A stretch of 63,449 nt of DNA, filler included, from Salisapilia sapeloensis CBS 127946 (taxonomy: Eukaryota; Protista; Oomycota), in the NCBI GenBank assembly GCA_023334545.1. It is 8 parts of 8 records of this genome, joined end to end, with 100 filler letters (N's around TTAATTAATTAA, not from the genome) between each part and the next. Parts side by side here need not be neighbours in the genome. Positions count along the whole stretch, not along the records: positions 10,263 to 30,865 come from JAADVB010000296.1; 7 more parts are not named here. One strand, 5' to 3'. A model generated the notes under the pieces. It searched no databases. It saw only the letters and a program-made list of their open reading frames with translations, and had not been told where the DNA came from. Positions within the stretch are counted from its first letter, which is position 1. Every line of letters starts with the position of its first letter. Shown here in pieces: positions 10,628 to 27,265 of this stretch. A program made the position numbers and the translations under genes.

Positions 10628-12752
10628 CTAATCGTCCATGAAGAAGTAGTTGCCAGTAGCCTTCTGCTCGACATCCTTGACACTCGCGTGCTTGTTGATT
10701 CGCGGTCGGAAGTTGGTCGGGTCGCGACGGAAGGTGATTTCAAGCTGCTTGAGGAATTTGTTCATACCCGACAGGAGGCTCTCTGGCGAGTGGGCCGTAC
10801 ACTCCTTACCGGGCTGGCCGTCGTACACGACGACACGGTCGGCCAAATACGTTGCCATGATGAAATCGTGCTCGACAATGAACGCCGTTTTCTTGGCGTG
10901 CAGGATGAATCGCTTAATGACCTTGGCGGCAAGAATACGCTGCTCCGAGTCCAAGTACGCCGACGGCTCATCGATCAGGTAGATATCAGCGGGTTTGCCA
11001 AGACACATGATGATAGCGACACGCTGGAGCTCACCACCAGACAAGTGCGGGACGGCCTGGTCAATAATATCGTCCAAGTTCAGGGGCTTGGTGACGTCCG
11101 TCGCGAACTGCGGGTGGATGATGGCTTCCCGAATACGACGGTGTAGAAGCTCTCGGACGGTGCCCTGGAACTTGGGCGCGATCTTCTGCGGCTTGTAACT
11201 GATGACGTTCGTGTCGTATCGCAAGGCAGCGTCGCTCATGGCGTCCTCGTCCTGCTCCTCCTCTGCCTTTTGCATCTCGTCGCTCTTGAGCAGACCGGCG
11301 AGCATGCGGATAAAGGTCGTTTTGCCCGTACCGTTCTCACCGAGCATACAGATGATCTCCGAGTTGGTAAAGTCTCCGTGCTCGACGTGAAGTTTGAAGA
11401 GCGCCTCCTTCTTCTTCGAGAGAAGCGTCTTGGTCATCGAAGGGTAGTTGTACGACTTGCCCTCGCCCTTGGTGCTCATCATCTCATCGGCCGTCTGCGC
11501 CACCTTGAACGTCAGCTCTTCCTGTCGGAATCGAAGGTTCTCCGTCGGGACAAAACCAGCAAGGAAGATGTTGATACCTTCACGAACACTGAAAGGCATG
11601 GTCACGACTCCGTACGCACTCGGCGTACCATATAGGACGCAGATAAAGTCGGAGAGATAGTCCAAGACACTCAAGTCGTGCTCGACGCAGATCACGTACG
11701 ATTGCTTGTCCTCTTCGACCATGGATCGGATCACCAGAGCGGCCTTCAGTCGCTGACGCACATCGAGGTACGAAGACGGCTCATCGAACATGTAAATGTC
11801 CGCCTTCTGGACGGCGACGACGCCGATGGCAAAGCGCTGGAGCTCTCCACCACTCAAGTGCTCAATGTCACGTTCCTGGACGTGGGCGAGGTCGAGTTCC
11901 TGGAGGAAGTGGTCCAGTTGGTCCGCTTTTTCACAACGCTGCTCGAGGATGCCGCGGACCGTGCCCTTAACGGCTTTGGGGATCTTATCAACGTACTGCG
12001 GCTTGGTGATGGCTTTCAAGTTGTCCTCCAGAATACGCGTGAAGTAGTTCTGGAGCTCCGAGCCACGGAAGTGCGCCAGAATCTCCTGCCACTCGGGCGG
12101 GTTGTCGAAGCGACCAAGGTTCGGCTTGAGTTTTCCAGCCAAGATGCGCAACGCGGTGGACTTGCCGATACCATTTGTACCGACGAGACCAAGCACCTGA
12201 CCAGGACGAGGCATGGGAAGACTATTGGAGGGATTTATTAGAGATTGAAATAGAGTGGAAGGGGAGATGGAAGTGTACCGGTGGAGTTTGAAGGTGTTGG
12301 CGCCGTATCGGTGCGTCGTGTTGTTTTCCAAGTCCTATAAGACAAGAGGTTAGACCTCTTGGTCTGTCGTGTAGATTGCAAAAAGGAAAGAGACTTGCCT
12401 TGGGAAGATTGATGATGTTGATGGCTTCGAATGGGCATTTCTTGACGCAGATACCACAACCGATGCAGAGCTATAGACGATTTTAGTAACCACGTCTGGA
12501 AAATAGTAAGGGATATAATGCGAACCTGTTCGGAGATGAAGGCGATCTTGCTCTTGGGAGTCACTTCAATACACAGCTTGCCTAGATACATGTATTCAGT
12601 CAGAATTCGCTCCTTGTCATCTCTTTGCATGCGAGATGCGTACCCATGCGAACAACAGGACAGGACTTGCGGCATTCCTGTCGGCACTTCTTGGGCTTGC
12701 ACTTGTCTGTGCTGACGATAGCGATACGGGTCAACTTTTCCTTATCCGACAT
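10628..12752 (-). CDS. ABCE1: ABCE1/RLI1 Fe-S ABC ATPase (ribosome recycling), 5 exons
   Basis: [57 protein letters not shown] x2, [22 protein letters not shown]. Introns 12582-12643, 12471-12525, 12335-12398 (GC-AG), 12222-12278. Confidence 0.97.
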
Positions 12753-14252: not shown

Positions 14253-17200
14253 TTAGTACACTTCAAGCACGTAGCGTCCTTCCTCACGCATGCGTTCGAT
14301 CGTGGCGTTGGCCTGCTTGCGGTCCATGCCAGCCTCTTCCGTGAAGGACGACACCAGCGCCTCGCGCACGTCTGCCACAGGCCACGTGGGTCCGCATAGG
14401 TAGAAGTGGGCGTTGCGGTGGAGCATCCAGTCGGCAAGCAAGGTCTTGTCCTCGGCGATACGGTCCTGAATGTAGACCTTATTTTCCTGGTCACGAGAGA
14501 AGGCGCAGCGGAGGTGGGTCACCAGTCCCTGACGCACGTACTCCTCGAGCTCATCGCCGTACAAGAACTCCTTGGACTTGTATCGACTGCCAAAGTAGAG
14601 CGCAATGGGTCCGACCTTTACGCCCTGCGAGCGCAAGAAAGCGCGCTCTTGGATGAAGGCTCGGAAAGGAGCCATACCAGTTCCTAGACCAGCCATGACG
14701 ATCGGGTCCTCTGGGTTCACCGGGAGCTTCATGACGGACGACGTGACCGAGACAGAGAGCTTCTGGCCTGGCTGGATCGCCGACAAAAAGTTGGTGGCCT
14801 GACCGATGCGGTACTTGCCGCTGGGTGTAGTCCAGTCGTGGACGACGATGAGTAAGTGGACACTCTTCGGGTTCATGCGCATGCTGGAGGCGATCGAGTA
14901 GTGACGCGGCTTGATGCGCGGCACCAAGTGGACGAGGTCCTCCATAGTAGGACGAGCCGACGTGAACTCCTCCAAGAGCTCTGCGTAGGTGGTAGTTTCA
15001 TCCACACGACGCTTGTACTCTTCCTTTCCTTCAGCATCAAGCAAGAAGAGCAGCTTCTCCTTCTGCTTCGAGTCCGTCGCGCGGTCCGCAAGAGCCTGGT
15101 AGAACTTCTTGGACGGACGACCGAAGACGTCGAGGACGTGGGAGAAGAGCTGGAAGAAGGACAGCGTCTCTTCCTTGGCAGGCTTGGACTTGTCCTTGGA
15201 CGTAACAGGTAGAGACACGAGCTCATCCGGATCGACATTGTACGAGCGCAAGAACTCGAGCACTTCGGCTTCGTCGTTGTGGGCAAAGACAGCCAAGGCT
15301 TCTCCGATACGGTACGAGATAGCCGTGTTGGTCGTGTCCATCTCGACGTGGAAGACGTTACGATCGTAGTCGTCCGGCGTTAGACGCTCCCACTTGGTGA
15401 CCGTGACCAAGTCCGTCACGTGATCACGAACGGCCTGCGTGGTCTCGTACTCATCCGGGAAGAGCATTCGCCACGCCGTCTTGGTGTGGTTCGAGATGTT
15501 ACGACGAGAGCGCTTGCTGCCGTTTACACGAGCAGACGCGACGGAGTGAGCAACCTTGCTGCGTTGGAGCGCCGACAGCTTTTCAAGTTGCTTCTCCTCC
15601 ACCTCCAATTCTTCCGTGCCGTCGTCTGAAGAGTCCGAAGTCTCCGACAAGGACTTCCATTCGCTGGCGGGGTACGTGATGCTGTGCATTTCACTCCAGA
15701 CAGACGACACGAACTGACGAAGAGTAGCGTGCATCATGGGGGCAACTTGCTTTTGTAGAAGGGCCAGCACCACTTCTTCCGAGTACAGACCCGTCGCCTT
15801 GAGGAAGGCGATCTGGGCAGCAAAGCAGGCCACGTCGTCTTCTTCCACACGGCCTTGGACGTCGCTCAAGTCGATTACAAGAAGCTGGACGTCCTTCTGC
15901 GCAAGAGCAGACTTGAATGCATCGAGGTCAGGGAGATCGTCGATCGTGTTCCACTCGGCGTTCACAAGAAGCTTGCCTCCCTGCTTAACGCTCGAGACAA
16001 CGTCGAACTCTTCGATGATCTCGCTGCGGCTGACGAAGACAACGTCCGCTTCCTCGACCGTCTGGTGGAGAGCGCTGTCGTCAACAGAGCGAGGGGAAAG
16101 ACGGGCCTCGAGGCACGAGACTGGGCGCTGAACAGAGCCGTCAGCGCTGAATGGAGTGCTGTGGCTGACTAGGGCGTTCACTTGCGTCGACTGGTTACCG
16201 TTGAGCAACTGCAGAGTGGACTCAAAGGTAGACAAGAGCGACTTGCGCTGGTCGTTCTGAGCATCCGGGTCATCAAAACCGTAGAGGAGGAACTGCTTTC
16301 CATAAGCCTCACTGTTTGTGAGTTCTAGCTCATCGCCGTAGATGACCTCCATCGCGTTTACGTTCTTGGAGCCGTCAGTCAACGCCTGCAAAGTAGCGTC
16401 CAAGTGGCTCTCGGTTTGTGCCACGACGAACGGACGGCGAGACTGTTGGTCCTGCACGTAGCGGAGGACACGACGAGCCATGCCAGGCGTGAAAGAGCAC
16501 TGGCGGAAGACACCGCCGTAGACACCAGTGACGACAGTCGGAGAGCTCGTCTGTTCCCAGTGGTTGGAGTGGAAGAAGACCTGCACGTGCTGACTGAGCA
16601 GACCGTTCTGGAAAGCAAGAGCCCCAGGAGGAAGGTTCTCCAACACAGCCACACGCTTCGCAGTGGAAGGCATGGCATCCGCGAAGAGCGTGTGCGACCA
16701 CGGAAGGAGGAGACGAACCTGCACGACACCCACCTTGCCACCGAGCATCTGCTCGTAGTTGACGGCCTGACGCACAGCGCCAGTAGCTTCGCCCATGACA
16801 ACGATCACAGTTTCGGCGTCAGGAGCGCCAAAGTAGTCGTACACCTTGTATTGCTTGTGTAGCGCATGGAAGAGGTCGTCCATGACGCTCTGTACCTGTT
16901 CAGCGGTCACTGGGGCGGTGGTGTTCTTGATGGCAGTGTTCGACACGGCAGACGCAATGTCAAAGACAGACTTGGCACTCAGCGTCTGCATGGGTGAAAG
17001 CTCACGAGCGATGCGAGAGCTGTCGTAGAAGTGGACGGCCAAAGCCGAGAGCTTGCGAGCAGCCATTTGAGCGACGACAGCCATGTCATGCATCTCCTGA
17101 GGAGTAGCCGAGTTCAAGAGAATGGCACCAGAGTGCTGCAAGGCGTAGATAGACTCGTACGAGCCACCGACAGCCAGGTCGTTACGGATGGATTCACAGC

Positions 17201-17684
17201 CGATGTGGGCGACAGCAGGCTGACGCTTCTGTCCGATGTCAAAGAGCTGAGGAATGAACAGAGGGAGCGATTGCGCCGGCAAGAGGGCAGCGGCGTGGGC
17301 ACCGGTTGCGAGCACACCTCGAAGAGCTTCGGCAGCTCGCTGACGGATCTGCAGCGTCACAACGCGAGCAGTAAAGTCCTCCTTCTTGAGGTTCGCGTCG
17401 GACAAGTCACTCGACTGTTCGTCCAAAAGCGGGTAGAGGAAGACATCGTCTGTGGCGTGGGCAGCGACGTTCAAGAGAGCGTTAGTACCGGAGGAAAAGC
17501 TGTCTTGCCTCTGCGCTTCACGCAGCACCTTCCAAAGCTTGGTCGCGTCGTAGTTGGGCGTAGCCGAGCTCGCAATGCTGCCAGTCTCGAGCGTCATGAG
17601 CGTGGACGTGTCCAGCGCTGCTGGCTTGTTCAGACTGAGCGCATACCAAGGAAGGTATTGGTTAGATTCTTGCACCGACGACAT
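14253..17684 (-). CDS. MET10: Sulfite reductase [NADPH] flavoprotein (alpha) subunit, MET10-like
   Basis: PFOR-like N-terminal domains (GVVQVRLLLPW), then FAD/NADPH module: RLTPDDYDRNVFH, RHYSIASS, MAGLGTGMAPFRAF, LYFGSR, AFSRDQ..YIQD, FYLCGP, GRYVLEVY. Confidence 0.88.
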   Translation of the reverse strand: MSSVQESNQYLPWYALSLNKPAALDTSTLMTLETGSIASSATPNYDATKLWKVLREAQRQDSFSSGTNALLNVAAHATDDVFLYPLLDEQSSDLSDANLKKEDFTARVVTLQIRQRAAEALRGVLATGAHAAALLPAQSLPLFIPQLFDIGQKRQPAVAHIGCESIRNDLAVGGSYESIYALQHSGAILLNSATPQEMHDMAVVAQMAARKLSALAVHFYDSSRIARELSPMQTLSAKSVFDIASAVSNTAIKNTTAPVTAEQVQSVMDDLFHALHKQYKVYDYFGAPDAETVIVVMGEATGAVRQAVNYEQMLGGKVGVVQVRLLLPWSHTLFADAMPSTAKRVAVLENLPPGALAFQNGLLSQHVQVFFHSNHWEQTSSPTVVTGVYGGVFRQCSFTPGMARRVLRYVQDQQSRRPFVVAQTESHLDATLQALTDGSKNVNAMEVIYGDELELTNSEAYGKQFLLYGFDDPDAQNDQRKSLLSTFESTLQLLNGNQSTQVNALVSHSTPFSADGSVQRPVSCLEARLSPRSVDDSALHQTVEEADVVFVSRSEIIEEFDVVSSVKQGGKLLVNAEWNTIDDLPDLDAFKSALAQKDVQLLVIDLSDVQGRVEEDDVACFAAQIAFLKATGLYSEEVVLALLQKQVAPMMHATLRQFVSSVWSEMHSITYPASEWKSLSETSDSSDDGTEELEVEEKQLEKLSALQRSKVAHSVASARVNGSKRSRRNISNHTKTAWRMLFPDEYETTQAVRDHVTDLVTVTKWERLTPDDYDRNVFHVEMDTTNTAISYRIGEALAVFAHNDEAEVLEFLRSYNVDPDELVSLPVTSKDKSKPAKEETLSFFQLFSHVLDVFGRPSKKFYQALADRATDSKQKEKLLFLLDAEGKEEYKRRVDETTTYAELLEEFTSARPTMEDLVHLVPRIKPRHYSIASSMRMNPKSVHLLIVVHDWTTPSGKYRIGQATNFLSAIQPGQKLSVSVTSSVMKLPVNPEDPIVMAGLGTGMAPFRAFIQERAFLRSQGVKVGPIALYFGSRYKSKEFLYGDELEEYVRQGLVTHLRCAFSRDQENKVYIQDRIAEDKTLLADWMLHRNAHFYLCGPTWPVADVREALVSSFTEEAGMDRKQANATIERMREEGRYVLEVY

Positions 17685-19934: not shown

Positions 19935-22455
19935 ATGGTGAATCGAAAGGAGAAGCGCAAACAAGAGCGTCTGGAGAAGAAGCAGCGTCGGTCTCAAAAG
20001 AACCAGAGCAAAAGACCAGCGCCAGTAGAGACAGAAGGCAACAAGAATGGCGGTAAAAAGCGCAAGGTCGAGCGACCGACGCAGACCAGTGACAAGCCTA
20101 GTCGCGGCAATGGACCGAGCAACAAGTTCCACGAGCTATTGCAGGAAACAGCTCGTTCTACAGGTGGATAACCAATTTTAATCGTTCATTGTCTATCCGT
20201 TAATTTAATTGATGATGGAAGTAGAAGGTGGAGAGGACTCGCCTTCAGCCGAAGACAAGGAGATTGCAGCGTTGGAGAAAAAGCTCGGCATCTCATCTAG
20301 CTCGGCCCAAGGAAAGAAGAAGCTGCAGAAGGAGTATATGCTCGATGGACTAGGTGACGACTTCACCGACTTCCTATCGAGCTTGGACAATATCTCCAAG
20401 GTCGTGAAAGAACGATCGAACGGCAAGGCGAAACCCAATGCTCCACCTGCTTCAGAAGATGAAAGTGGCCTAGACGAACCGGATAACATGAGCGACATGA
20501 GCGAGGACACTAGACAGGAGATGCTACAGCTGCAGGCAGAGGAAGCCAACTTCCTCCAAGGCATGGAAGACCTACCTACGGACGAATCGGACATTGAGGA
20601 GGAAGACGAAGAGATGCTGTCAGAGCCTGAAGATGACGAAGTAGCTGCCAATACAGCTCAGAATCAGCAGCTTTCTGGGTCTGAGTCGGAGGAGGACGAG
20701 GCTCCGTCTGATAATGTAGAGAAGGATGCGTCTGAAGAAGTAGAAGAAGAAGATTTGTCGGAGGAAGAAGCAGACAAGGTTGCTTATAATAAGGAAGAAA
20801 AGGACGAGTCGGAAGAAGAGGTGGAGGAAGATATTTATGGTCGACCGGTTCTAAAGAAGGACAATGGTGAAAAGAAGCCTTCCGCATATGTTCCTCCTCA
20901 CCTCCGAAAGCAAGCTGCATCTACGAAAGACAAGAAGACTGGGATGGATGAGCAAGAGCTACGTGAGCTCACTCGTCGGATCAACGGTCAGATCAATCGT
21001 ATCGCAGAGAGCAACATGGAGCCCATATGCCTCGAACTGGAGAAAATCTACCGGAGCTACCCGACGTCTGTCGTGAACGATGTGCTCCTATCCAAGATCC
21101 AGCAAACGACCATCCACCCTCGTCAGCTCCTTACGTCCTTGATCAAGACCTGTGGCGCACTCATGTCTGCACTGTTCCACAGTGTCGGCAGTCAACTCGG
21201 TGGCTTCTTCCTCGAGAAAATCGTGCTCAAGCTTCATGCGTCAGTAATTGAAAACCGAGAGAAGCCGACGGAGGAGGAAGAAAGCTCGAAAGAGCCTGTC
21301 AACCTCCTCTTGCTCGTGTGTGTCCTGTACATTTGTGGCGTGGCCCACTGTTCTCTCATCTACGACCTCTTCCGATCGTTCGTAGAGCACGGCACACCGC
21401 TGGACATTGAGCTCATCTACCACCTGCTCAAGCACTGTGGACCTCAGCTCCGATCCGATGACAATGACTCTTTGCGAGAGATGGTTGCCTCTGTCCAGGA
21501 GAATATCCAGAAGCAGGACAATGAAGAGCGTGCGAGGTATCTTTTGGATGTTATCGATGACCTGAAGAAGCCTGGTAAAGGTAAACACGTGTCTTCATCC
21601 ATGGACATGACGTCCCTGAAGAAATGGATTGGACGTGTCAAGACTCGTTGCGGCAACTCCAACTCGGCGCTACGTGTATCGCTAGACGAATTGCTGAATG
21701 CAGATGAGAAGGGAAGATGGTGGATCGTTGGAGGGACGTGGAAACCTGAGGCTCCTGTCCATGAAGAAACGAAAGAGCAGGAGAATGAGCTCCTGCAGCT
21801 CGCATCCAAGATGCGTATGAACACAGACGTGCGCAAGCGTATCTTCATTGCAATCATGGGCGCCACGGACTCCTTAGATGCGTATGAGCGGCTGCTCCAG
21901 CTCAAGCTTCGCGACAAGCAGGAGCGAGAGATCGTCCGTGTTTTGCTCCACTGCTGTGCTAGTGAGCGGCAGTTTAATCGGTACTACTTGCTCTTGGCAC
22001 AGAAGCTGTGCGAGCTGGACCCCCGGTACAAGTTCACGTTCCAACTGGCCTTGTGGGATCAGTTCAAGCAGTTCGAGTCCATGAGTCAGCGCAAGGTGTA
22101 CAACGTCGCGCAGTTCCTAGCTGGGATGGTCGCCAGTGCGAGTCTGTCGCTCTCGTGCCTCAAGGTTCTGGACTTTACCCAGCTAGAATCCAACGCCGTC
22201 TTGTTCCTGCGCGCCGTCATGGAGCAACTGCTAAAGCAGGAGAGAGAGGAAGACGTTTCGGCCGTGTTTGAGCGACTGCTGCAGACGAAGAAGGCACAGC
22301 TGACGCTAGACGGCCTCGCAGTCTTCGTCCATCAACACATGGACGGCACCTTGACCGACGTGGAGATGAAGCGACGGCTACAGAGCGTTCGGAGCCTACT
22401 CGACCAGCTCTCCAAGACAGCAGCACAAAAGGACAAGCGCAGTATGGAAATCTAA
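19935..22455 (+). CDS. NOM1: Nucleolar MIF4G/MA3-domain protein (NOM1/Sgd1)
   Basis: Basic N-terminus, intron 20164-20224, acidic tract, YVPPHLR, INGQINRIAESN, MNTDVRKRIFIAIMG..LKLRDKQEREIVRVLLHCC. Confidence 0.88.
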
Positions 22456-22469
22456 AAGACAAAGATGCT

Positions 22470-24836
22470 CTACTTGTTTTCCTTCTTCTCCCACTTTTCA
22501 TACTCTTGCGTCAAATCACTACTGAGTCCTTCCTTCCACCGCAGCGAGTTCAGCGCAGTGTACGCCATACTCTTCACCCGCATCTTGGCCTTACCCGTTC
22601 TCGTCTCCGGCAAGGCGCTCGTGTCGAGACAGATGACACCAGGAACGTCGAACATGTCGCTGTAGCCCATGCCAAAGACGATCGCGCCTGGACCCCACTC
22701 CTTGACGTAGTTCTCCAACTGCTTCGCGATCAGTTTCTTGCCGACCAAGTGCGCTCCGTAGTAGTTCTTGGCATCCACCCATCGGATTGGCGTTCCGTTC
22801 ACTTCGACCGGATCCAGCAGCAAGAGGTCGGGAGACAGCACTCTTCGTCCATGCGTTTCGATCTGTTCTAATCCAAGGTCCTCCTCTGTCTTCACTCGGA
22901 TGCCCTGGGAGCGGAAGTAGTGCTCGATCGTGACTTCGAGACTGTCCTTGTTGTACTCTGGTGGACCGAGGAACGGGTCGCTCCGATGCAAACTGTCGTA
23001 GTTGGAGGCTCGACGCAGCTGGTGCTGATCTCTTGACGTCAAGAGCTCACTCTGAGAGTTCAAAGCTCTCTTGATCTGAGTAGTAGAGAAGCCTCGATGC
23101 CTCAGAATGATCCGCAATAGACTTACAGGAGGGTAGTTGTGCGTCTTGGAGAGAGAGATGAGACTCGTTCCGCTCTCATACTGGTCGCTAATGGTCTGCA
23201 CTTCCCTCCGTACGCGATGCGTGTTCACAAGTAGGCTCATACGCTGCAGCTGCTTCCTCAAGTTCATCGTGACGTTCGTGGTGATCGGAAGCATCTGCAG
23301 GAGACTGTCGATCCTGTTCACTTGCTTTCGACTCATACGCTTGAATGTCATGCTTTCCTGTCGAAGGATGAGTCCCGCAGCCTGCGTCTCCAGTAGCTGA
23401 GGAATCGGTTGGGCGTCCCACTCCAGTCGACGTACGGGCAGCCCACTGTCTTTGAACTGCTCTGACGTTCGTTTCAAAAGGGCGTCCCATTGCCCAAAGT
23501 CACTCTTCTTCGGGAACAGAGCCGTGTTGATGTCGGCTAGGACTGCATGCATGGCAAAGCACGGGTCTAGTCCGACTGCACGGACGCCTTCCATGACCGT
23601 CAGCGCCTTATCTTTGCGTCCTGTCTCAAGAGACGTGAGAGACGAGATCTCCGGCTCGACTCCTGCTAAGCGCATTTCCATGAGCAGATCGAAGAAGGCT
23701 TCCGAGTCCCATATACGAGACGCTTGATGCAGCCAGAAGGTGTACGTCGTCCGGTGGACCTTTCGATGAAGACGGAGCTCTTGGAGGACAGCCACAGCGC
23801 CAGACAAGTACTTTTTCTTCTCGCAAATCGTCAATAGTCGATCGAGGTCCTGCAATGACAGCTTCAGACCAGCTCTCTCCATCGTCCGCCATAGATCGAC
23901 ACCTTCCACAGCAGCGTTCGTCTTCTCACATAGGTCCAACAGAGACATGAACGTCGTCGTTTCAATCTTTCGTCCTTGGGAGATCATGTCTTGGAGAATG
24001 TCGAGGGCGTCTCGAGCACGACCGGCTTCCAGACACGACTCGACGCCTCGCAACATGAACTTTTCATCCAGAGAAGCGTTGCCGTATTTTCGGAAGAGCT
24101 CAAAGAGTTCATGACCGCGCTCAAAAGATGACATCTCCTGTAGCTGATGTGCCATGTTTGCAATCGTCACTGCTGGCGGCAGAGCTTCTTGCATCTCTTT
24201 GATCTCTAGCAGCTTTTGAGTCACTTTTTCATGCTCCGATAGCTTTCCCTTCTTGCCTTTCGGCTTGTCTGCGTTGTCTCCAGTCTTTTGTTTAGCTCCT
24301 TTATCACTTGCAGAGCCCTCATCTATTGATGTTAGCACTGAACTCGACTGCTTTGTCTTTTTTGCATGGTTGGACGTGCCATTGTCTCCGTCTTCATTCT
24401 TGATGACGTTCATTACAACGTCTTCAACTTCTTCTAATTGATCATCATTGAAGGCTGATGCTGCCTTGTTACCTGGTCCCTTTACAGAGGATTGGTCATT
24501 GCTAGTGGCATCCCCAGCAGCCTTTGCCTCTCCTTTCTCATCGGTTTTGGGCGTGTCTGTTTCTTTGGAAGCACTCTCAGCAACTGCATTGGTGACATCC
24601 ACCTTCTGGCTGTTCGCTTCGTGCTGCATTGTTGGATGTATGGTCTTAGTTGCCTCAGCACGTGCATGCTTTTTCTTTAAATGCTTGGCCTTGCGCTTCT
24701 TTTTCCCACGAGGAGGCTTACTTGCAGTCGTTTCCACACTTGCATCTGCAACTGACTGTGTCGACAGAAAGCGTATGGGACCGGACGGTCTCGCCAGTCC
24801 TCGTATATGAGCAGCTCGGACGGCGGAACGAAGCAT
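22470..24836 (-). CDS. Putative mitochondrial PPR protein with C-terminal CDIN1/C15orf41(TPD)-like PD-(D/E)xK nuclease domain
   Basis: Presequence-like MLRSAVRAAHIRGLARPSGPIRFLST; four tandem 34-35 aa PPR-like repeats at 23649-24065; C-terminal LISLSKTHNYPPVSLLRIIL, TEEDL, SPDLLLLDPVEVNGTPIRWVDAKNYYG, QLENYVKEWGPGAIVF. Confidence 0.8.
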   Translation of the reverse strand: MLRSAVRAAHIRGLARPSGPIRFLSTQSVADASVETTASKPPRGKKKRKAKHLKKKHARAEATKTIHPTMQHEANSQKVDVTNAVAESASKETDTPKTDEKGEAKAAGDATSNDQSSVKGPGNKAASAFNDDQLEEVEDVVMNVIKNEDGDNGTSNHAKKTKQSSSVLTSIDEGSASDKGAKQKTGDNADKPKGKKGKLSEHEKVTQKLLEIKEMQEALPPAVTIANMAHQLQEMSSFERGHELFELFRKYGNASLDEKFMLRGVESCLEAGRARDALDILQDMISQGRKIETTTFMSLLDLCEKTNAAVEGVDLWRTMERAGLKLSLQDLDRLLTICEKKKYLSGAVAVLQELRLHRKVHRTTYTFWLHQASRIWDSEAFFDLLMEMRLAGVEPEISSLTSLETGRKDKALTVMEGVRAVGLDPCFAMHAVLADINTALFPKKSDFGQWDALLKRTSEQFKDSGLPVRRLEWDAQPIPQLLETQAAGLILRQESMTFKRMSRKQVNRIDSLLQMLPITTNVTMNLRKQLQRMSLLVNTHRVRREVQTISDQYESGTSLISLSKTHNYPPVSLLRIILRHRGFSTTQIKRALNSQSELLTSRDQHQLRRASNYDSLHRSDPFLGPPEYNKDSLEVTIEHYFRSQGIRVKTEEDLGLEQIETHGRRVLSPDLLLLDPVEVNGTPIRWVDAKNYYGAHLVGKKLIAKQLENYVKEWGPGAIVFGMGYSDMFDVPGVICLDTSALPETRTGKAKMRVKSMAYTALNSLRWKEGLSSDLTQEYEKWEKKENK

Positions 24837-24930
24837 TGCTCGCACTGATCTACACTGCGGTTTTGGTGGTCTCGGTGGTTTCTCTTACAAAAACAAAGAC
24901 AAAATAAAACCTCCAAATTAACTATTCCAT

Positions 24931-24991
24931 CCAATCACGCTACATAATAAGAATCTAATTAATGGCGCCAGATTTTAAAACTCGCGGGAAA
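24931..24991. promoter_or_regulatory. Bidirectional promoter with CCAAT, E2F-like and CHR-like sites
   Basis: CCAAT 24931-24935, TGGCGCCA 24963-24970, TTTAAA ~24974-24979, GCGGGAAA (=TTTCCCGC) 24984-24991; lies between divergent ATGs at 24836 and 25012. Confidence 0.5.
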
Positions 24992-25011
24992 AGCACTCTA
25001 CGACACTAAGC

Positions 25012-27265
25012 ATGAGCTCCGAGGCGCTCGCGTTGGAAACACAGCTACTGCTGCAGGAGGTCACCCATGCCAACCCATTGGACTCGTATGATGGTGCAGT
25101 CTCCGGATCGGCTTATGATGCAGAGGAAGGGCGTGAGGAACCTGCGTATACCGAGGTAGAGCTCGCCAAGCAGAGTCTCGTGGAAAAGCTGCGCAAGAAG
25201 AGAGAGATGAACATGGAAAAGCAGCGCAAGGTGCATGAAAAGCGCTTTGGTTTTACGCTTGATGAGTCAAAAGCACAGGATGCGAGTGGACAGAATGGCA
25301 ATGCAGAGCAAGCTGAAAATACGTATCGAACGCCCGCTCCCAAGGAACCACAGACACGGCCGATCAACCTCCCAGTTGCTACATCCAGTCGATTCAGTAC
25401 TTCCCAAAAGCAGCAAAAGATGCTTAGCAAATTCCGCGCTCAAGCCATTGAGCAAGGTACTATTTTATCATTTATAAGCTTTTCATCTAGATTCTGACTT
25501 GTCCTGTAGGTTCCCAAGAAATGGCCAAGCTCTTTGGTTACAACTCTTTCGAAGAGCAGTTGCAATATCTCACAAAGCTAGAAAAACGAAAGCTTTTGGC
25601 TGCTCAGAGAGGTGAAGTCCAGATGACTTCCCAGCCTCCTCAGGTCATGGACGAGGAGGAGGATGACTCGGACTACGTACCGGAAGAAGAGCAGCCAGAG
25701 CAGTCAGAAGTACCCAAACAGCCAGTACAGTCAGAGACAACGCCTGAACCATCCAACACTATTACAGAAACCAACCTTTCTACGACTGAAACTCCAACAA
25801 AGACAGTTTCTAGCCCCAAGAAGATCTCATCTCCCACCTCAAAACGATCTCCGAAGCCAAGTCCAAAGGCAGCTGAGGCAGAGGATGGGAATGAAGCTGA
25901 TGGTGAGCATGAGGAAGAAGCGCAGAGTACGAAGCCAGCCAAGGACAGGAACGCCACGTACCGTGCTTTGCTGGAAGAGGAGGCTCGGTCCTACCGTCGT
26001 CAGCGGAAGGACAAGAATCGAGGCGACTGGCTAGAAGATGAAGCCGAGGAAGACGAGGAAGAAGAGAATGCTCTGCACATCCAAGGTCTAGGCGACTACG
26101 GTTTTGGCGTGGCGAGACCGCAGACAGCAGCAGAGAAAGAGGCTGCAGAAGAACGGAACGCGTTGAATGTTCGGAAGGAAGACCTAGATGGCATTGTGGA
26201 CGAACTGTCGGACGATGAAGCCAAGGCGGCAGCGGACCTGGACGAGATCTTCCGACAGGAGAGTGAAAAGAGAGATCAGGAGCAGGTGCAGGCGGTCATG
26301 CGAAACGTCAAGGAAGGTTATGGACGTAATCGACGAGCGTTCGGTAGTCATGTTGGCGCAGACGGAGCTCGAGGTCGGTTCAATTTGAACGACCTGGTGG
26401 CTGCGGATGGAGATCGAGACGAAGCCAAGCGCCTGGGACTTTTAGAAAGTGATGAGGAAGAGGAAAAAGAAGAGAAGGAGAAAGAGGATGAGGAAGCAGA
26501 GCTAGAGAGGCGGTTGCGAGAACGATACGAGAACCAGCCGCAGATCTACATTACGTCTTCCGAGTCGGAAAATGAAGAGGAGGAAGAGGAGGAGAAGAAG
26601 GAGGAGCAGGAGGATTCGGATGAAGAACGAGAGAAGCGTCAGATGAAGAGCTTTTCGGAGAAGGCGAGGATTAACCGACGCATGCAGCGTATGCGACTGG
26701 CACAGGAACAGGGTGGGAAGAAGAACAAGAAGGAGGAGAAGAATTGGTTGCTGGACGATGAAGAGGAAGACCACGAGGTACAAAATGTTGGTAGATTTCT
26801 ATAAGAGGATGTTTATTAATGCTTCGTAGCTTTTAAAAGTGCTACAGCAGAAAAAGCAGCGTTCTGGTGAAGGAGAGACAGTCTCGACAGATCGGGTGCA
26901 GAGCTTTAGCTACACTAAGTCGGCGTCCTTCGCGACAGTCGCAGACAAGTGTCAGCTTTTTTCCAACTCGGTACGAGTTCTACTACTCTTCTACTCTTCT
27001 GTACCTAACGTGTTGTAAATAGGGAGTGCAAGGTCGATCGTTTGTCTTTACGTCGTCCACGGAGGACGCTTCTAGCCAGTTACCGGAAGGAGAGCAGGCG
27101 ACTCCGGCTGAATTACAGAAGAGCAAGAGCTGGAGTGCTGGCGTGAAACGGTCTCATCCACAGAAGACTTCCAGCAGGAAAAAGGCCAAGGCGAGTAACT
27201 TTTTCTCGGCCCTCCAAAGCTTTGACTGCGCTCCGCAGACGACCAGTAGTTGCCTGGAACAGTAA
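25012..27265 (+). CDS. Mrc1/claspin-like replication checkpoint mediator (4 exons)
   Basis: Introns 25457-25509, 26778-26829 and one near 26970-27022; very acidic; WLEDEAEEDEEE..GLGDYGFG..DLDGIVDELSDDE..EKRDQEQVQAVMRNVKEGYGRNRR resembles the MRC1-like domain. Confidence 0.7.

What the first reader, a model, noticed from the sequence alone, without database searches (positions are those of the whole stretch)
22470..24836. Mitochondria-targeted PPR + CDIN1-type nuclease fusion: candidate sequence-guided organellar nuclease
Seen: an Arg-rich, acid-free presequence-like N-terminus (..IRFLST), four consecutive 35/35/34/35-aa helical repeats (EKFMLRG..GRKIE, TTTFMSLL..GLKLS, LQDLDRLL..RKVH, RTTYTFWL..GVEPE; 23649-24065), and a C-terminal domain with an HTH-like segment plus SPD..WVDAK..QLENYVKEWGPG. 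Known: PPRs read RNA one base per repeat. Human CDIN1/C15orf41 (TPD domain) carries TPD..WIESK..FGPG, belongs to the restriction-endonuclease-like PD-(D/E)xK fold, and has no PPRs. PPR-nuclease fusions that I know use NYN (PRORP) or SMR domains. Inference: a PPR-guided PD-(D/E)xK nuclease for mitochondrial RNA processing or mtDNA transactions; I do not recall this architecture being characterised.
Basis: partly seen in the sequence, partly recalled or inferred. Interest (0 to 1): 0.8.

Follow-up and report, generated by a model that had tools for sequence, protein, structure and literature searches.

The report
PPR repeats fused to CDIN1 nuclease
An oomycete gene encodes one 788-residue protein joining a mitochondrial-type leader, a short block of PPR RNA-binding repeats and a complete, catalytically intact copy of the CDIN1 nuclease (the human anaemia gene); the fusion is real, transcribed and conserved across oomycetes but has not been studied.

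Summary
Positions 22470-24836 (minus strand) are one intron-less ORF of 788 aa, and spliced RNA assemblies cover it end to end.

It contains, in order:
- an Arg-rich, acid-free N-terminus;
- a Lys-rich low-complexity linker with a KKKRK cluster;
- four 35/35/34/35-aa PPR repeats with degenerate flanking repeats;
- a highly conserved connector;
- a whole CDIN1 module: a helical N-domain plus a PD-(D/E)xK domain (Pfam TPD, E 8e-23).

E634, D670, D688 and K690 are invariant and sit where the catalytic E/D/(D/E)/K residues of the CDIN1 family sit.

The same architecture occurs in Peronosporales, Saprolegniales and three divergent environmental relatives. These proteins group together in a tree of the module.

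My best reading is a mitochondrial, Mg-dependent RNA nuclease whose PPR block positions the substrate (about 0.5). "Sequence-guided" is not supported: the PPR code positions are non-canonical and not conserved. Localisation was not tested.

The main rival is a nuclear or cytosolic partner of the oomycete Codanin-1 homologue. I found no short CDIN1 paralogue in oomycetes.

Helical repeats joined to a PD-(D/E)xK domain are already known (FASTK/RAP proteins), so this is a new variant of a known kind.

The parts
22470..24836 (-). Complete coding sequence, 788 aa plus TAG stop, with no intron
   Evidence: ORF list. First ATG at 24836. RNA contigs of runs X1-X3 cover 22000-24865 without joints and end 8-29 nt upstream of the ATG. 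34 of the 39 differences I tabulated from the read laying list (15 more were not shown) against a 97%-identical relative fall on third codon positions, with only 4 amino-acid changes.
24747..24836 (-). Presequence-like N-terminus (residues 1-30): 5 Arg, no acidic residue, ending in an R-F-L-S-T motif that fits an R-3 type processing site
   Evidence: Composition. Of the 13 oomycete sequences (window included), 12 have no Asp or Glu in the first 30 residues, and all have 3-6 Arg/Lys there. An R-x-[LFV..]-S motif recurs. The same pattern is seen in the environmental relatives P0046 and P0047. No targeting predictor was available.
24237..24746 (-). Low-complexity Lys/Ala/Ser/Asp-rich linker (residues 31-200), probably disordered. 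It contains a conserved basic cluster (residues 43-57, 24666-24710) with a KKKRK core.
   Evidence: Composition. Only 11% mean identity to orthologues, except for the basic cluster, which appears in the consensus as KRKK..K.KKK.
24066..24236 (-). N-terminal cap helices and one degenerate helical hairpin before the PPR block (residues 201-257)
   Evidence: The AF2 model has helices at model residues 7-23, 28-41 and 44-57 (add 194 for protein numbering) with pLDDT around 90. The invariant residues L209, I212, Q216, L219 and P220 lie here.
23649..24065 (-). Four tandem PPR repeats of 35/35/34/35 aa (residues 258-396)
   Evidence: Pfam PPR_long, PPR_2, PPR_3 and PPR. dPPR10 at E 7.6e-21. Eight helices in four hairpins in the AF2 model. 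Foldseek matches PPR proteins.
23427..23648 (-). Connector (residues 397-470): a distorted fifth repeat holding the longest run of invariant residues in the protein (S399-M429, almost unbroken), then a variable loop
   Evidence: Invariant columns 397-429. The model shows a beta-hairpin plus helices here. The alignment to dPPR10 extends to residue 435. The same block is kept in P0046, P0047 and, more weakly, P0220.
22977..23426 (-). CDIN1 N-domain (residues 471-620): all-helical, with HTH-like elements
   Evidence: Canonical 270-300-aa CDIN1 homologues align from about residue 470. Human CDIN1 residues 5-265 superpose on protein residues 483-736. Weak VIA match to the StbA HTH domain, Z 4.0. 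65% mean identity among oomycetes.
22602..22976 (-). PD-(D/E)xK nuclease domain (residues 621-745). Putative catalytic residues: E634 (22935-22937), D670 (22827-22829), D688 (22773-22775) and K690 (22767-22769).
   Evidence: Pfam TPD, E 8.4e-23. E, PD and K are invariant, and D688 nearly so, across 59 and 84 family members. In the model the topology is helix(E)-strand-helix-strand(D)-strand(DxK)-helix-strand. Most of the top-50 VIA matches, all 11 single-domain alignments among those at Z 5.0-6.8 included, are PD-(D/E)xK nucleases.
22473..22601 (-). C-terminal helix and short Lys/Glu-rich tail (residues 746-788)
   Evidence: The model has a helix at module residues 277-296, then low pLDDT. K755, S756, N763, L771, S773 and L775 are invariant.

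Best explanation
This is a nuclear gene for an organelle-type RNA nuclease built from three units.
1. An N-terminal presequence imports the protein into mitochondria and is cleaved near R-F-L|S-T (inferred).
2. A short PPR solenoid of four canonical and two degenerate repeats is held rigidly against the nuclease through an almost invariant connector. It binds mitochondrial RNA, or an RNA structure, in the manner of PRORP rather than reading a long sequence base by base (inferred).
3. A complete CDIN1 module hydrolyses RNA with a metal ion held by E634, D670 and D688 and with K690. It probably trims from a free 3' end, as shown for human CDIN1 (inferred by homology).

In humans the helical-repeat bundle of Codanin-1 binds the CDIN1 N-domain in trans and stimulates and positions the substrate. 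Here a helical-repeat domain is supplied in cis.

Shown: the architecture, one transcript, conservation, purifying selection, and an intact catalytic tetrad in a confident PD-(D/E)xK model.
Not shown: localisation, substrate and activity.
For: - One ORF and one transcript.
- PPR repeats.
- Whole CDIN1 module with the tetrad kept.
- Human CDIN1 is an Mg-dependent, RNA-specific nuclease that needs a free RNA 3' end. It is inactivated by D196A/E214A and stimulated by Codanin-1 (PMC13463051).
- High-confidence two-module model, pTM 0.78.
- Acid-free, Arg-rich N-termini recur in the PPR forms despite low sequence identity (12 of the 13 oomycete sequences have no acidic residue in the first 30), but not in the diatom long forms, which have acidic, Cys-rich N-termini.
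- From established knowledge: PPR proteins outside plants are almost all mitochondrial.
- Purifying selection.
- The fusion is old and groups together in the module tree.
Against: - No targeting predictor or experiment was available.
- A conserved KKKRK cluster after the presequence fits a classical nuclear localisation signal.
- Oomycetes are reported to have Codanin-1 homologues (PMC7092493), and I found no separate short CDIN1 in oomycetes. This protein may therefore be the only CDIN1 available to pair with Codanin-1.
- PPR code positions are non-canonical and variable, so RNA binding by the repeats is itself unproven.
- The Pfam PPR score is only just above the cut-off.
Confidence: 0.5

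Rival explanations
1. It is the oomycete orthologue of canonical CDIN1. It works in the nucleus or cytoplasm with the oomycete Codanin-1 homologue. The PPR-like solenoid is an added RNA- or protein-binding platform, and the KKKRK cluster is a nuclear localisation signal. Dual targeting is also possible.
For: - Codanin-1 and C15orf41 homologues are both reported in oomycetes and diatoms (PMC7092493).
- Every named oomycete hit in a profile search sized for short proteins was the long PPR form or a fragment of it. No short paralogue was seen.
- The basic cluster is conserved.
- Diatom CDIN1 homologues also carry N-terminal extensions, with Stc1-like zinc fingers, that look non-organellar.
Against: - The presequence-like N-terminus is conserved in kind across all PPR forms.
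- From established knowledge, PPR proteins are overwhelmingly organellar.
- The search depends on shared 5-residue words and could miss a divergent short paralogue.
- Residues equivalent to the human Codanin-1 contacts could not be mapped.
Confidence: 0.25
2. It is a mitochondrial DNA nuclease for recombination, repair or nucleoid maintenance, as the reader offered as an alternative.
For: - Many PD-(D/E)xK enzymes act on DNA.
- The structural neighbours are restriction enzymes, Hjc, NucS and Vsr.
- The CDIN1 N-domain has HTH-like elements, and human CDIN1-Codanin-1 binds DNA in gel shifts.
Against: - Human CDIN1-Codanin-1 cut no DNA substrate, even at 10-fold higher concentration, and cut only the RNA strand of hybrids (PMC13463051).
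- PPR domains typically bind RNA.
Confidence: 0.08
3. It is a non-catalytic RNA-binding or ribosome-assembly factor. The PD-(D/E)xK domain would serve only as a binding module, as proposed for several RAP/FASTK proteins and for the PD-(D/E)xK-like domains built into protist mitoribosomes.
For: VIA matches include mitoribosomal proteins of Toxoplasma (Z 5.8) and Tetrahymena (Z 4.0) and the FASTKD4 RAP module (Z 3.9).
Against: All four catalytic residues and the surrounding motifs are invariant across oomycetes, and E, PD and K are invariant across 84 family members. This is not expected of a degenerate binding module.
Confidence: 0.07

Closest known systems
Human CDIN1 (C15orf41), the Codanin-1-interacting nuclease mutated in CDA-I
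   Same: Residues ~470-745 form a complete CDIN1 module. Pfam TPD is hit at E 8e-23. The predicted fold superposes on human CDIN1 residues 5-265 (TM 0.68 by hit). It has the same two-domain build and the same catalytic E / PD / (D/E)xK set, with the same 18-residue spacing between the D and the (D/E)xK.
   Different: Human CDIN1 is 281 aa with no extension. It is nuclear or cytoplasmic and depends on Codanin-1 in trans. Here about 470 extra N-terminal residues add a presequence-like leader, a basic linker and PPR repeats. E214 of the human enzyme is Asp here. Only about 15% identity to vertebrate CDIN1 in the structural alignment.
FASTK / RAP-domain proteins (FASTKD1-5; OPR-RAP and HPR-RAP proteins)
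   Same: They follow the same design principle: a helical-repeat RNA-binding region followed by a C-terminal PD-(D/E)xK-fold domain, acting on organellar RNA (PMC9181182, PMC12687428). The FASTKD4 RAP module appears among the structural neighbours at Z 3.9.
   Different: The nuclease domain belongs to a different family. There is no RAP or FAST Pfam hit even at E 10. RAP is Vsr-like, whereas this is the CDIN1/TPD family with its own helical N-domain. The repeats are PPR, not FAST, OPR or HPR.
PRORP (protein-only RNase P)
   Same: A short PPR block of about 5 repeats sits N-terminal to a metallonuclease, joined by a structured connector. The best Pfam PPR hit is the PRORP-type PPR_long model. 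PRORP is mitochondrial in many lineages, stramenopiles included (PMC9181182).
   Different: The catalytic domain of PRORP is NYN, not PD-(D/E)xK. No zinc-binding central domain was detected here.
Diatom and other protist CDIN1 homologues with N-terminal extensions (for example P0071 of Chaetoceros, P0063 of Cylindrotheca)
   Same: They have the same C-terminal CDIN1 module, and they are also stramenopile proteins in which CDIN1 has gained an N-terminal domain.
   Different: Their extensions are Cys-rich Stc1-like zinc fingers with acidic N-termini, not PPR repeats with a presequence. They form a separate clade in the module tree.

Membership tests
PPR (pentatricopeptide repeat) proteins | Tandem ~35-aa helix-turn-helix repeats recognised by PPR profiles | tested here: met
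   Repeats of 35/35/34/35 aa at residues 258-396. PPR_long scores 27.7 bits against a cut-off of 27. Designer PPR hit at E 7.6e-21. Paired helices in the AF2 model. Foldseek matches PPR proteins at probability 1.0.
PPR (pentatricopeptide repeat) proteins | Canonical base-specifying residues at positions 5 and 35 (N/D, T/D, T/N, N/S), which allow a sequence to be read | tested here: not met
   The window protein has L/E, M/S, D/H and T/E. Peronosporales have T/D, R/x, N/S and M/E. Saprolegniales differ again. No target can be derived from these.
CDIN1 / TPD family (PF14811) | Profile match above the curated threshold | tested here: met
   81.2 bits against a cut-off of 27, E 8.4e-23. 951 family hits by phmmer with the module.
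CDIN1 / TPD family (PF14811) | Two-domain build: helical N-domain plus alpha/beta/alpha nuclease C-domain | tested here: met
   Human, mouse, bovine and frog CDIN1 AlphaFold models are the top Swiss-Prot matches, covering nearly their full length (TM by hit 0.66-0.68). Archaeal TPD proteins match at TM 0.83.
CDIN1 / TPD family (PF14811) | Catalytic residues equivalent to human E166, D196, E214 and K216 | tested here: met
   E634, D670 and K690 are invariant, and D688 nearly so (D or E), in alignments of 59 and 84 homologues and in 13 oomycetes. The human residues are taken from PMC13463051. Equivalence rests on motif and spacing, not on a direct alignment with the human sequence.
CDIN1 / TPD family (PF14811) | Binding to the Codanin-1 C-terminal helical bundle | not testable with these tools
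   No Codanin-1 sequence or complex prediction was available. No vertebrate CDIN1 was among the fetched proteins, so contact residues could not be mapped.
CDIN1 / TPD family (PF14811) | Metal-dependent RNA nuclease activity | not testable with these tools
   Biochemistry is needed.
PD-(D/E)xK phosphodiesterase superfamily | Core alpha-beta-beta-beta-alpha-beta fold with the D at the start of strand 2 and (D/E)xK in strand 3 | tested here: met
   Model secondary structure. Most of the top-50 VIA matches are PD-(D/E)xK nucleases (AF1548, VC1899, Can2, LlaBIII, FokI, NucS, Vsr, Hjc) over module residues ~157-286, and the 11 single-domain alignments among the Z 5.0-6.8 matches all belong to the superfamily. 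Each Z taken alone is only middling, and Foldseek against the PDB was not significant.
RAP / FASTK family | RAP (PF08373) or FAST profile match | tested here: not met
   No such hit even at E 10. There is only a distant structural resemblance, Z 3.9.
PRORP | NYN metallonuclease domain | tested here: not met
   No NYN hit. The C-terminal domain is PD-(D/E)xK.
Mitochondrial matrix-targeted proteins | Cleavable, amphipathic, Arg-rich, acid-free presequence | tested here: inconclusive
   Composition and an R-3-like motif fit and recur in orthologues. No validated predictor could be run, and the simple helical hydrophobic moment is modest.

The most novel reading that the evidence does not exclude
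In oomycetes the PPR solenoid, fused in cis, takes over the role that the helical-repeat bundle of Codanin-1 plays in trans for human CDIN1. The result would be a self-contained, RNA-targeted CDIN1 nuclease that has been moved into mitochondria to trim or degrade mitochondrial transcripts. The fusion would then be a natural "Rosetta stone": independent evolutionary evidence that RNA is the native substrate of the CDIN1 family.
Probability: 0.35. Interest if true: 0.7.

Novelty: new variant of a known kind. Interest (0 to 1): 0.55.

Why it matters
The cellular role of CDIN1 has been an open question since it was linked to congenital dyserythropoietic anaemia type I. Only in 2026 was it shown in vitro to be an RNA nuclease (PMC13463051).

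A conserved natural fusion of the whole CDIN1 module to an RNA-binding PPR domain is independent support for RNA as the family's substrate. It also offers a Codanin-1-independent, single-chain form that may be easier to study.

For oomycetes, which include major crop and fish pathogens, it would be a candidate mitochondrial RNA-processing nuclease. Mitochondrial RNA maturation in this group is, as far as I know, little studied.

It adds a third nuclease family, after NYN and SMR, to the domains found fused to PPR repeats. It is also a second PD-(D/E)xK lineage, after RAP, coupled to helical repeats.

Tried and rejected
- Sequence search of the PDB found no solved CDIN1 chain.
- Foldseek of the module against the PDB gave nothing significant (best E 0.06), although the weak hits were mostly PD-(D/E)xK enzymes.
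- The protein-atlas feature search gave only weak PPR leads, with scores below 0.8.
- I looked for a vertebrate CDIN1 among the fetched proteins to map the Codanin-1 contact residues R22, Q142, N146, A147 and E164. None was present.
- Predicting an RNA target from the PPR code was rejected because the code positions are non-canonical and unconserved.
- Membership in the RAP/FASTK, NYN/PRORP and SMR families was rejected for lack of any profile hit.
- A two-gene or mis-assembly artefact was rejected. There is one ORF, RNA contigs have no joints, and collinear orthologues exist in more than 25 species.
- The upstream GTG at 24845 listed by the ORF tool is irrelevant in a eukaryote. The transcript 5' ends lie at about 24844-24865 and the first ATG is at 24836.
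- Literature searches combining CDIN1 or C15orf41 with pentatricopeptide returned no paper.
Full report
**Observation**

The finding's coordinates hold one open reading frame on the minus strand, listed as 22470..24845 from a GTG. The first ATG is at 24836 and the stop (TAG) at 22470-22472, giving 788 aa.

RNA-library assemblies of the same organism (runs X1-X3) lay contigs over 22000-24865 with no joint, insertion or deletion. They stop 8-29 nt upstream of the ATG. The divergent neighbour's contigs begin at 24977-24997 and carry a 53-nt GT..AG splice at 25455-25507. The libraries are therefore RNA, the intergenic gap is silent, the gene has no intron, and the PPR and nuclease parts sit on one transcript.

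A 97%-identical relative (run X5) differs at 39 positions that I tabulated from the listing (15 more were not shown). Of these, 34 are third codon positions (binomial p = 5e-12), and only four conservative amino-acid changes result. The gene is under purifying selection.

**Anatomy**

- **Residues 1-30** carry 5 Arg and no acidic residue and end in R-F-L-S-T.
- **Residues 31-200** are Lys/Ala/Ser/Asp-rich and poorly conserved (11% identity), apart from a basic cluster with a KKKRK core.
- **Residues 201-257** form cap helices.
Pfam gives PPR_long at 27.7 bits (cut-off 27), plus sub-threshold PPR_2, PPR_3 and PPR hits. phmmer against PDB sequences gives designer PPR proteins at E down to 7.6e-21.
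- **Residues 397-470** are a connector. Its first part (S399-M429) is the longest nearly unbroken run of invariant residues in the protein.
- **Residues ~470-745** are a complete CDIN1 module. Free-standing 270-300-aa CDIN1 homologues align across this whole stretch, and Pfam TPD is hit at E 8.4e-23.

**Structure**

An AlphaFold2 model of residues 195-788, built from 59 homologues, has mean pLDDT 91.7 and pTM 0.78. It shows eleven helices in the repeat region, then the CDIN1 module.
- Against Swiss-Prot AlphaFold models, the seven best matches are vertebrate CDIN1. Human Q9Y2V0 residues 5-265 match with TM 0.68 by hit. Arabidopsis PPR proteins follow, matching the N-terminal half.
- AFDB clusters and the ESM Atlas give TPD/CDIN1 proteins, archaeal ones included.

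A second model of the module alone reached pLDDT 91.6 and pTM 0.86.
- Foldseek found no significant match in the PDB.
- The Foldseek-independent aligner returned Z 5-6.8 matches over module residues ~157-286. Most of the top 50, and all 11 single-domain alignments among those at Z 5.0-6.8, are PD-(D/E)xK nucleases: AF1548, VC1899, Can2, LlaBIII, Card1, FokI, NucS, Vsr, Hjc and VRR-NUC. The FASTKD4 RAP module and two mitoribosomal proteins also appear.
- Each Z alone is middling. The predominance of one fold family is the argument.

The model places E634 in the first core helix, D670 at the start of a strand, D688-x-K690 in the next strand, and Q706/Y710 in the following helix. This is the classical PD-(D/E)xK layout.

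**Catalytic residues**

E634, P669-D670, W686, K690, Q706, Y710, G715 and G717 are invariant, and D688 nearly so, in alignments of 59 and 84 family members. All are invariant among 13 oomycetes.

A 2026 study showed that human CDIN1 is an Mg-dependent nuclease that cuts RNA but no DNA substrate tested. It needs a free RNA 3' end, loses activity in D196A/E214A, uses E166, D196, E214 and K216, and is stimulated by Codanin-1. The C-terminal helical-repeat bundle of Codanin-1 binds the CDIN1 N-domain (PMC13463051).

The D-to-(D/E)xK spacing is 18 residues both in human CDIN1, by those numbers, and here. I could not align the human sequence directly, because none was among the fetched proteins.

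**Distribution**

- Collinear orthologues of similar length (633-932 aa; three longer gene models carry extra unrelated domains), 50-62% identical, occur in Globisporangium, Pythium, Lagenidium, Phytophthora, Peronospora, Plasmopara, Saprolegnia, Achlya and Aphanomyces. Sources name them automatically as "CDAN1-interacting nuclease 1" or "TPD sequence-motif-containing protein".
- Three divergent environmental proteins share the repeat region, the connector and the module: P0046 and P0047 (39% identity) and P0220 (34% and 24% in the two parts). They lie on compact eukaryotic contigs.
- Among the best 150 family representatives, roughly a sixth are N-terminally extended. The non-oomycete ones, including the diatoms Chaetoceros and Cylindrotheca, carry Cys-rich Stc1-like zinc fingers or unrecognised regions, not PPR repeats.
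- In a maximum-likelihood tree of the module, the ten PPR forms are one group (SH-aLRT 91; 99 for the nine closest). The diatom-type long forms are a separate clade (98). This is consistent with one origin of the fusion. That tree used a quick search, has several long branches and is unrooted.

**Targeting**

- 12 of the 13 oomycete sequences (the window's included) have no Asp or Glu in the first 30 residues. All have 3-6 Arg/Lys there, and an R-x-[LFV..]-S motif recurs, although the segment is only 31% identical.
- P0046 and P0047 show the same pattern. The diatom long forms have acidic N-termini.
- A presequence-like leader thus travels with the PPR form. This fits mitochondrial import, as does the general rule (established knowledge) that non-plant PPR proteins are mitochondrial.
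- It was not tested, because no predictor was available.

Three points count against an exclusively mitochondrial role:
- The KKKRK cluster fits a classical nuclear localisation signal and is conserved.
- Swickley et al. report both Codanin-1 and C15orf41 homologues in oomycetes and diatoms (PMC7092493).
- A profile search sized for short proteins found no separate short CDIN1 in any named oomycete, only the long form or fragments of it. This protein may therefore be the only CDIN1 in the lineage.

**Is it "sequence-guided"?**

The specificity positions (5 and last) of the four repeats are L/E, M/S, D/H and T/E. They differ in Peronosporales (T/D, R/x, N/S, M/E) and again in Saprolegniales. 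With four to six repeats and no conserved code, base-by-base reading of a defined sequence is unlikely. The best Pfam model is the PRORP-type PPR region. In PRORP, that region recognises the tRNA elbow rather than a linear sequence (PMC9181182).

**Verdict on mechanism**

- Most likely (about 0.5): a mitochondrial RNA nuclease in which a rigidly attached PPR block positions RNA for the CDIN1 active site, probably for 3'-end trimming or decay.
- Main rival (about 0.25): the canonical nuclear or cytosolic CDIN1 function with oomycete Codanin-1, or dual targeting.
- Minor rivals: an mtDNA nuclease (0.08), disfavoured by the RNA specificity of human CDIN1; and a non-catalytic RNA-binding or ribosome factor (0.07), disfavoured by the invariant catalytic set.

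**Comparison and novelty**

The nuclease is a true CDIN1-family member. The repeats are true PPR repeats but not code-type readers. The protein is not a RAP/FASTK, PRORP or PPR-SMR protein, since there are no such profile hits.

The design is that of FASTK/RAP proteins: helical repeats plus a PD-(D/E)xK-fold domain acting on organellar RNA (PMC9181182, PMC12687428). It also resembles PRORP.

No paper in the searched library holds CDIN1 or C15orf41 together with pentatricopeptide. The 2020 phylogenetic-profile paper noted oomycete homologues without mentioning the fusion.

I rate this a new variant of a known kind, of moderate interest. The architecture is solid and conserved, but function and localisation remain inferred.

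Noticed in passing
window 20209-22455 (+): The convergent neighbour encodes a MIF4G + MA3 protein, a domain pair that I recall from NOM1/Sgd1-type nucleolar proteins. Its stop codon lies only 14 nt from the stop of the PPR-CDIN1 gene. RNA contigs run across both genes, so the 3' ends of the two transcripts overlap.
   Followed up: partly
window 25012-26804 (+): The two ORFs 25012-25497 and 25521-26804 are one gene, joined by a 53-nt GT..AG intron (25455-25507) seen in three RNA assemblies. The product is a very acidic, Lys/Glu-rich protein with no Pfam hit. It shares a ~175-nt divergent intergenic region with the PPR-CDIN1 gene.
   Followed up: partly
window 14253-17684 (-): A 1143-aa ORF has POR_N and PFOR_II domains followed by FAD_binding_1 and NAD_binding_1. 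From memory this is the domain order of the sulfite reductase flavoprotein subunit (yeast Met10 type). It is too short to be a full pyruvate:NADP oxidoreductase.
   Followed up: no
window 10628-12331 (-): A 567-aa ORF with two ABC_tran ATPase stretches and no transmembrane-domain family among its Pfam hits. It looks like a soluble ABC-F/ABC-E type protein.
   Followed up: no
proteins P0071, P0063, P0073, P0081, P0085, P0062 (diatoms and metagenomes): Diatom CDIN1 homologues carry an N-terminal Cys-rich Stc1-like zinc-finger region in place of PPR repeats. This is a second, independent N-terminal extension of CDIN1 in stramenopiles. I found no description of it in the searches I ran.
   Followed up: partly
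proteins P0045 + P0233 (Peronospora belbahrii) and pairs such as P0041 + P0271, P0027 + P0273, P0035 + P0274: In several relatives the gene is called as two products with matching longest-contig lengths, so probably on one contig: a PPR part and a TPD fragment. The cause could be an intron, a frameshift or an annotation split. I did not examine which.
   Followed up: no
window 24666-24710 (-), residues 43-57: A conserved KKKRK-type basic cluster sits directly after the presequence-like leader in all oomycete orthologues. It could be a nuclear localisation signal, giving dual targeting, or a nucleic-acid-binding patch.
   Followed up: partly
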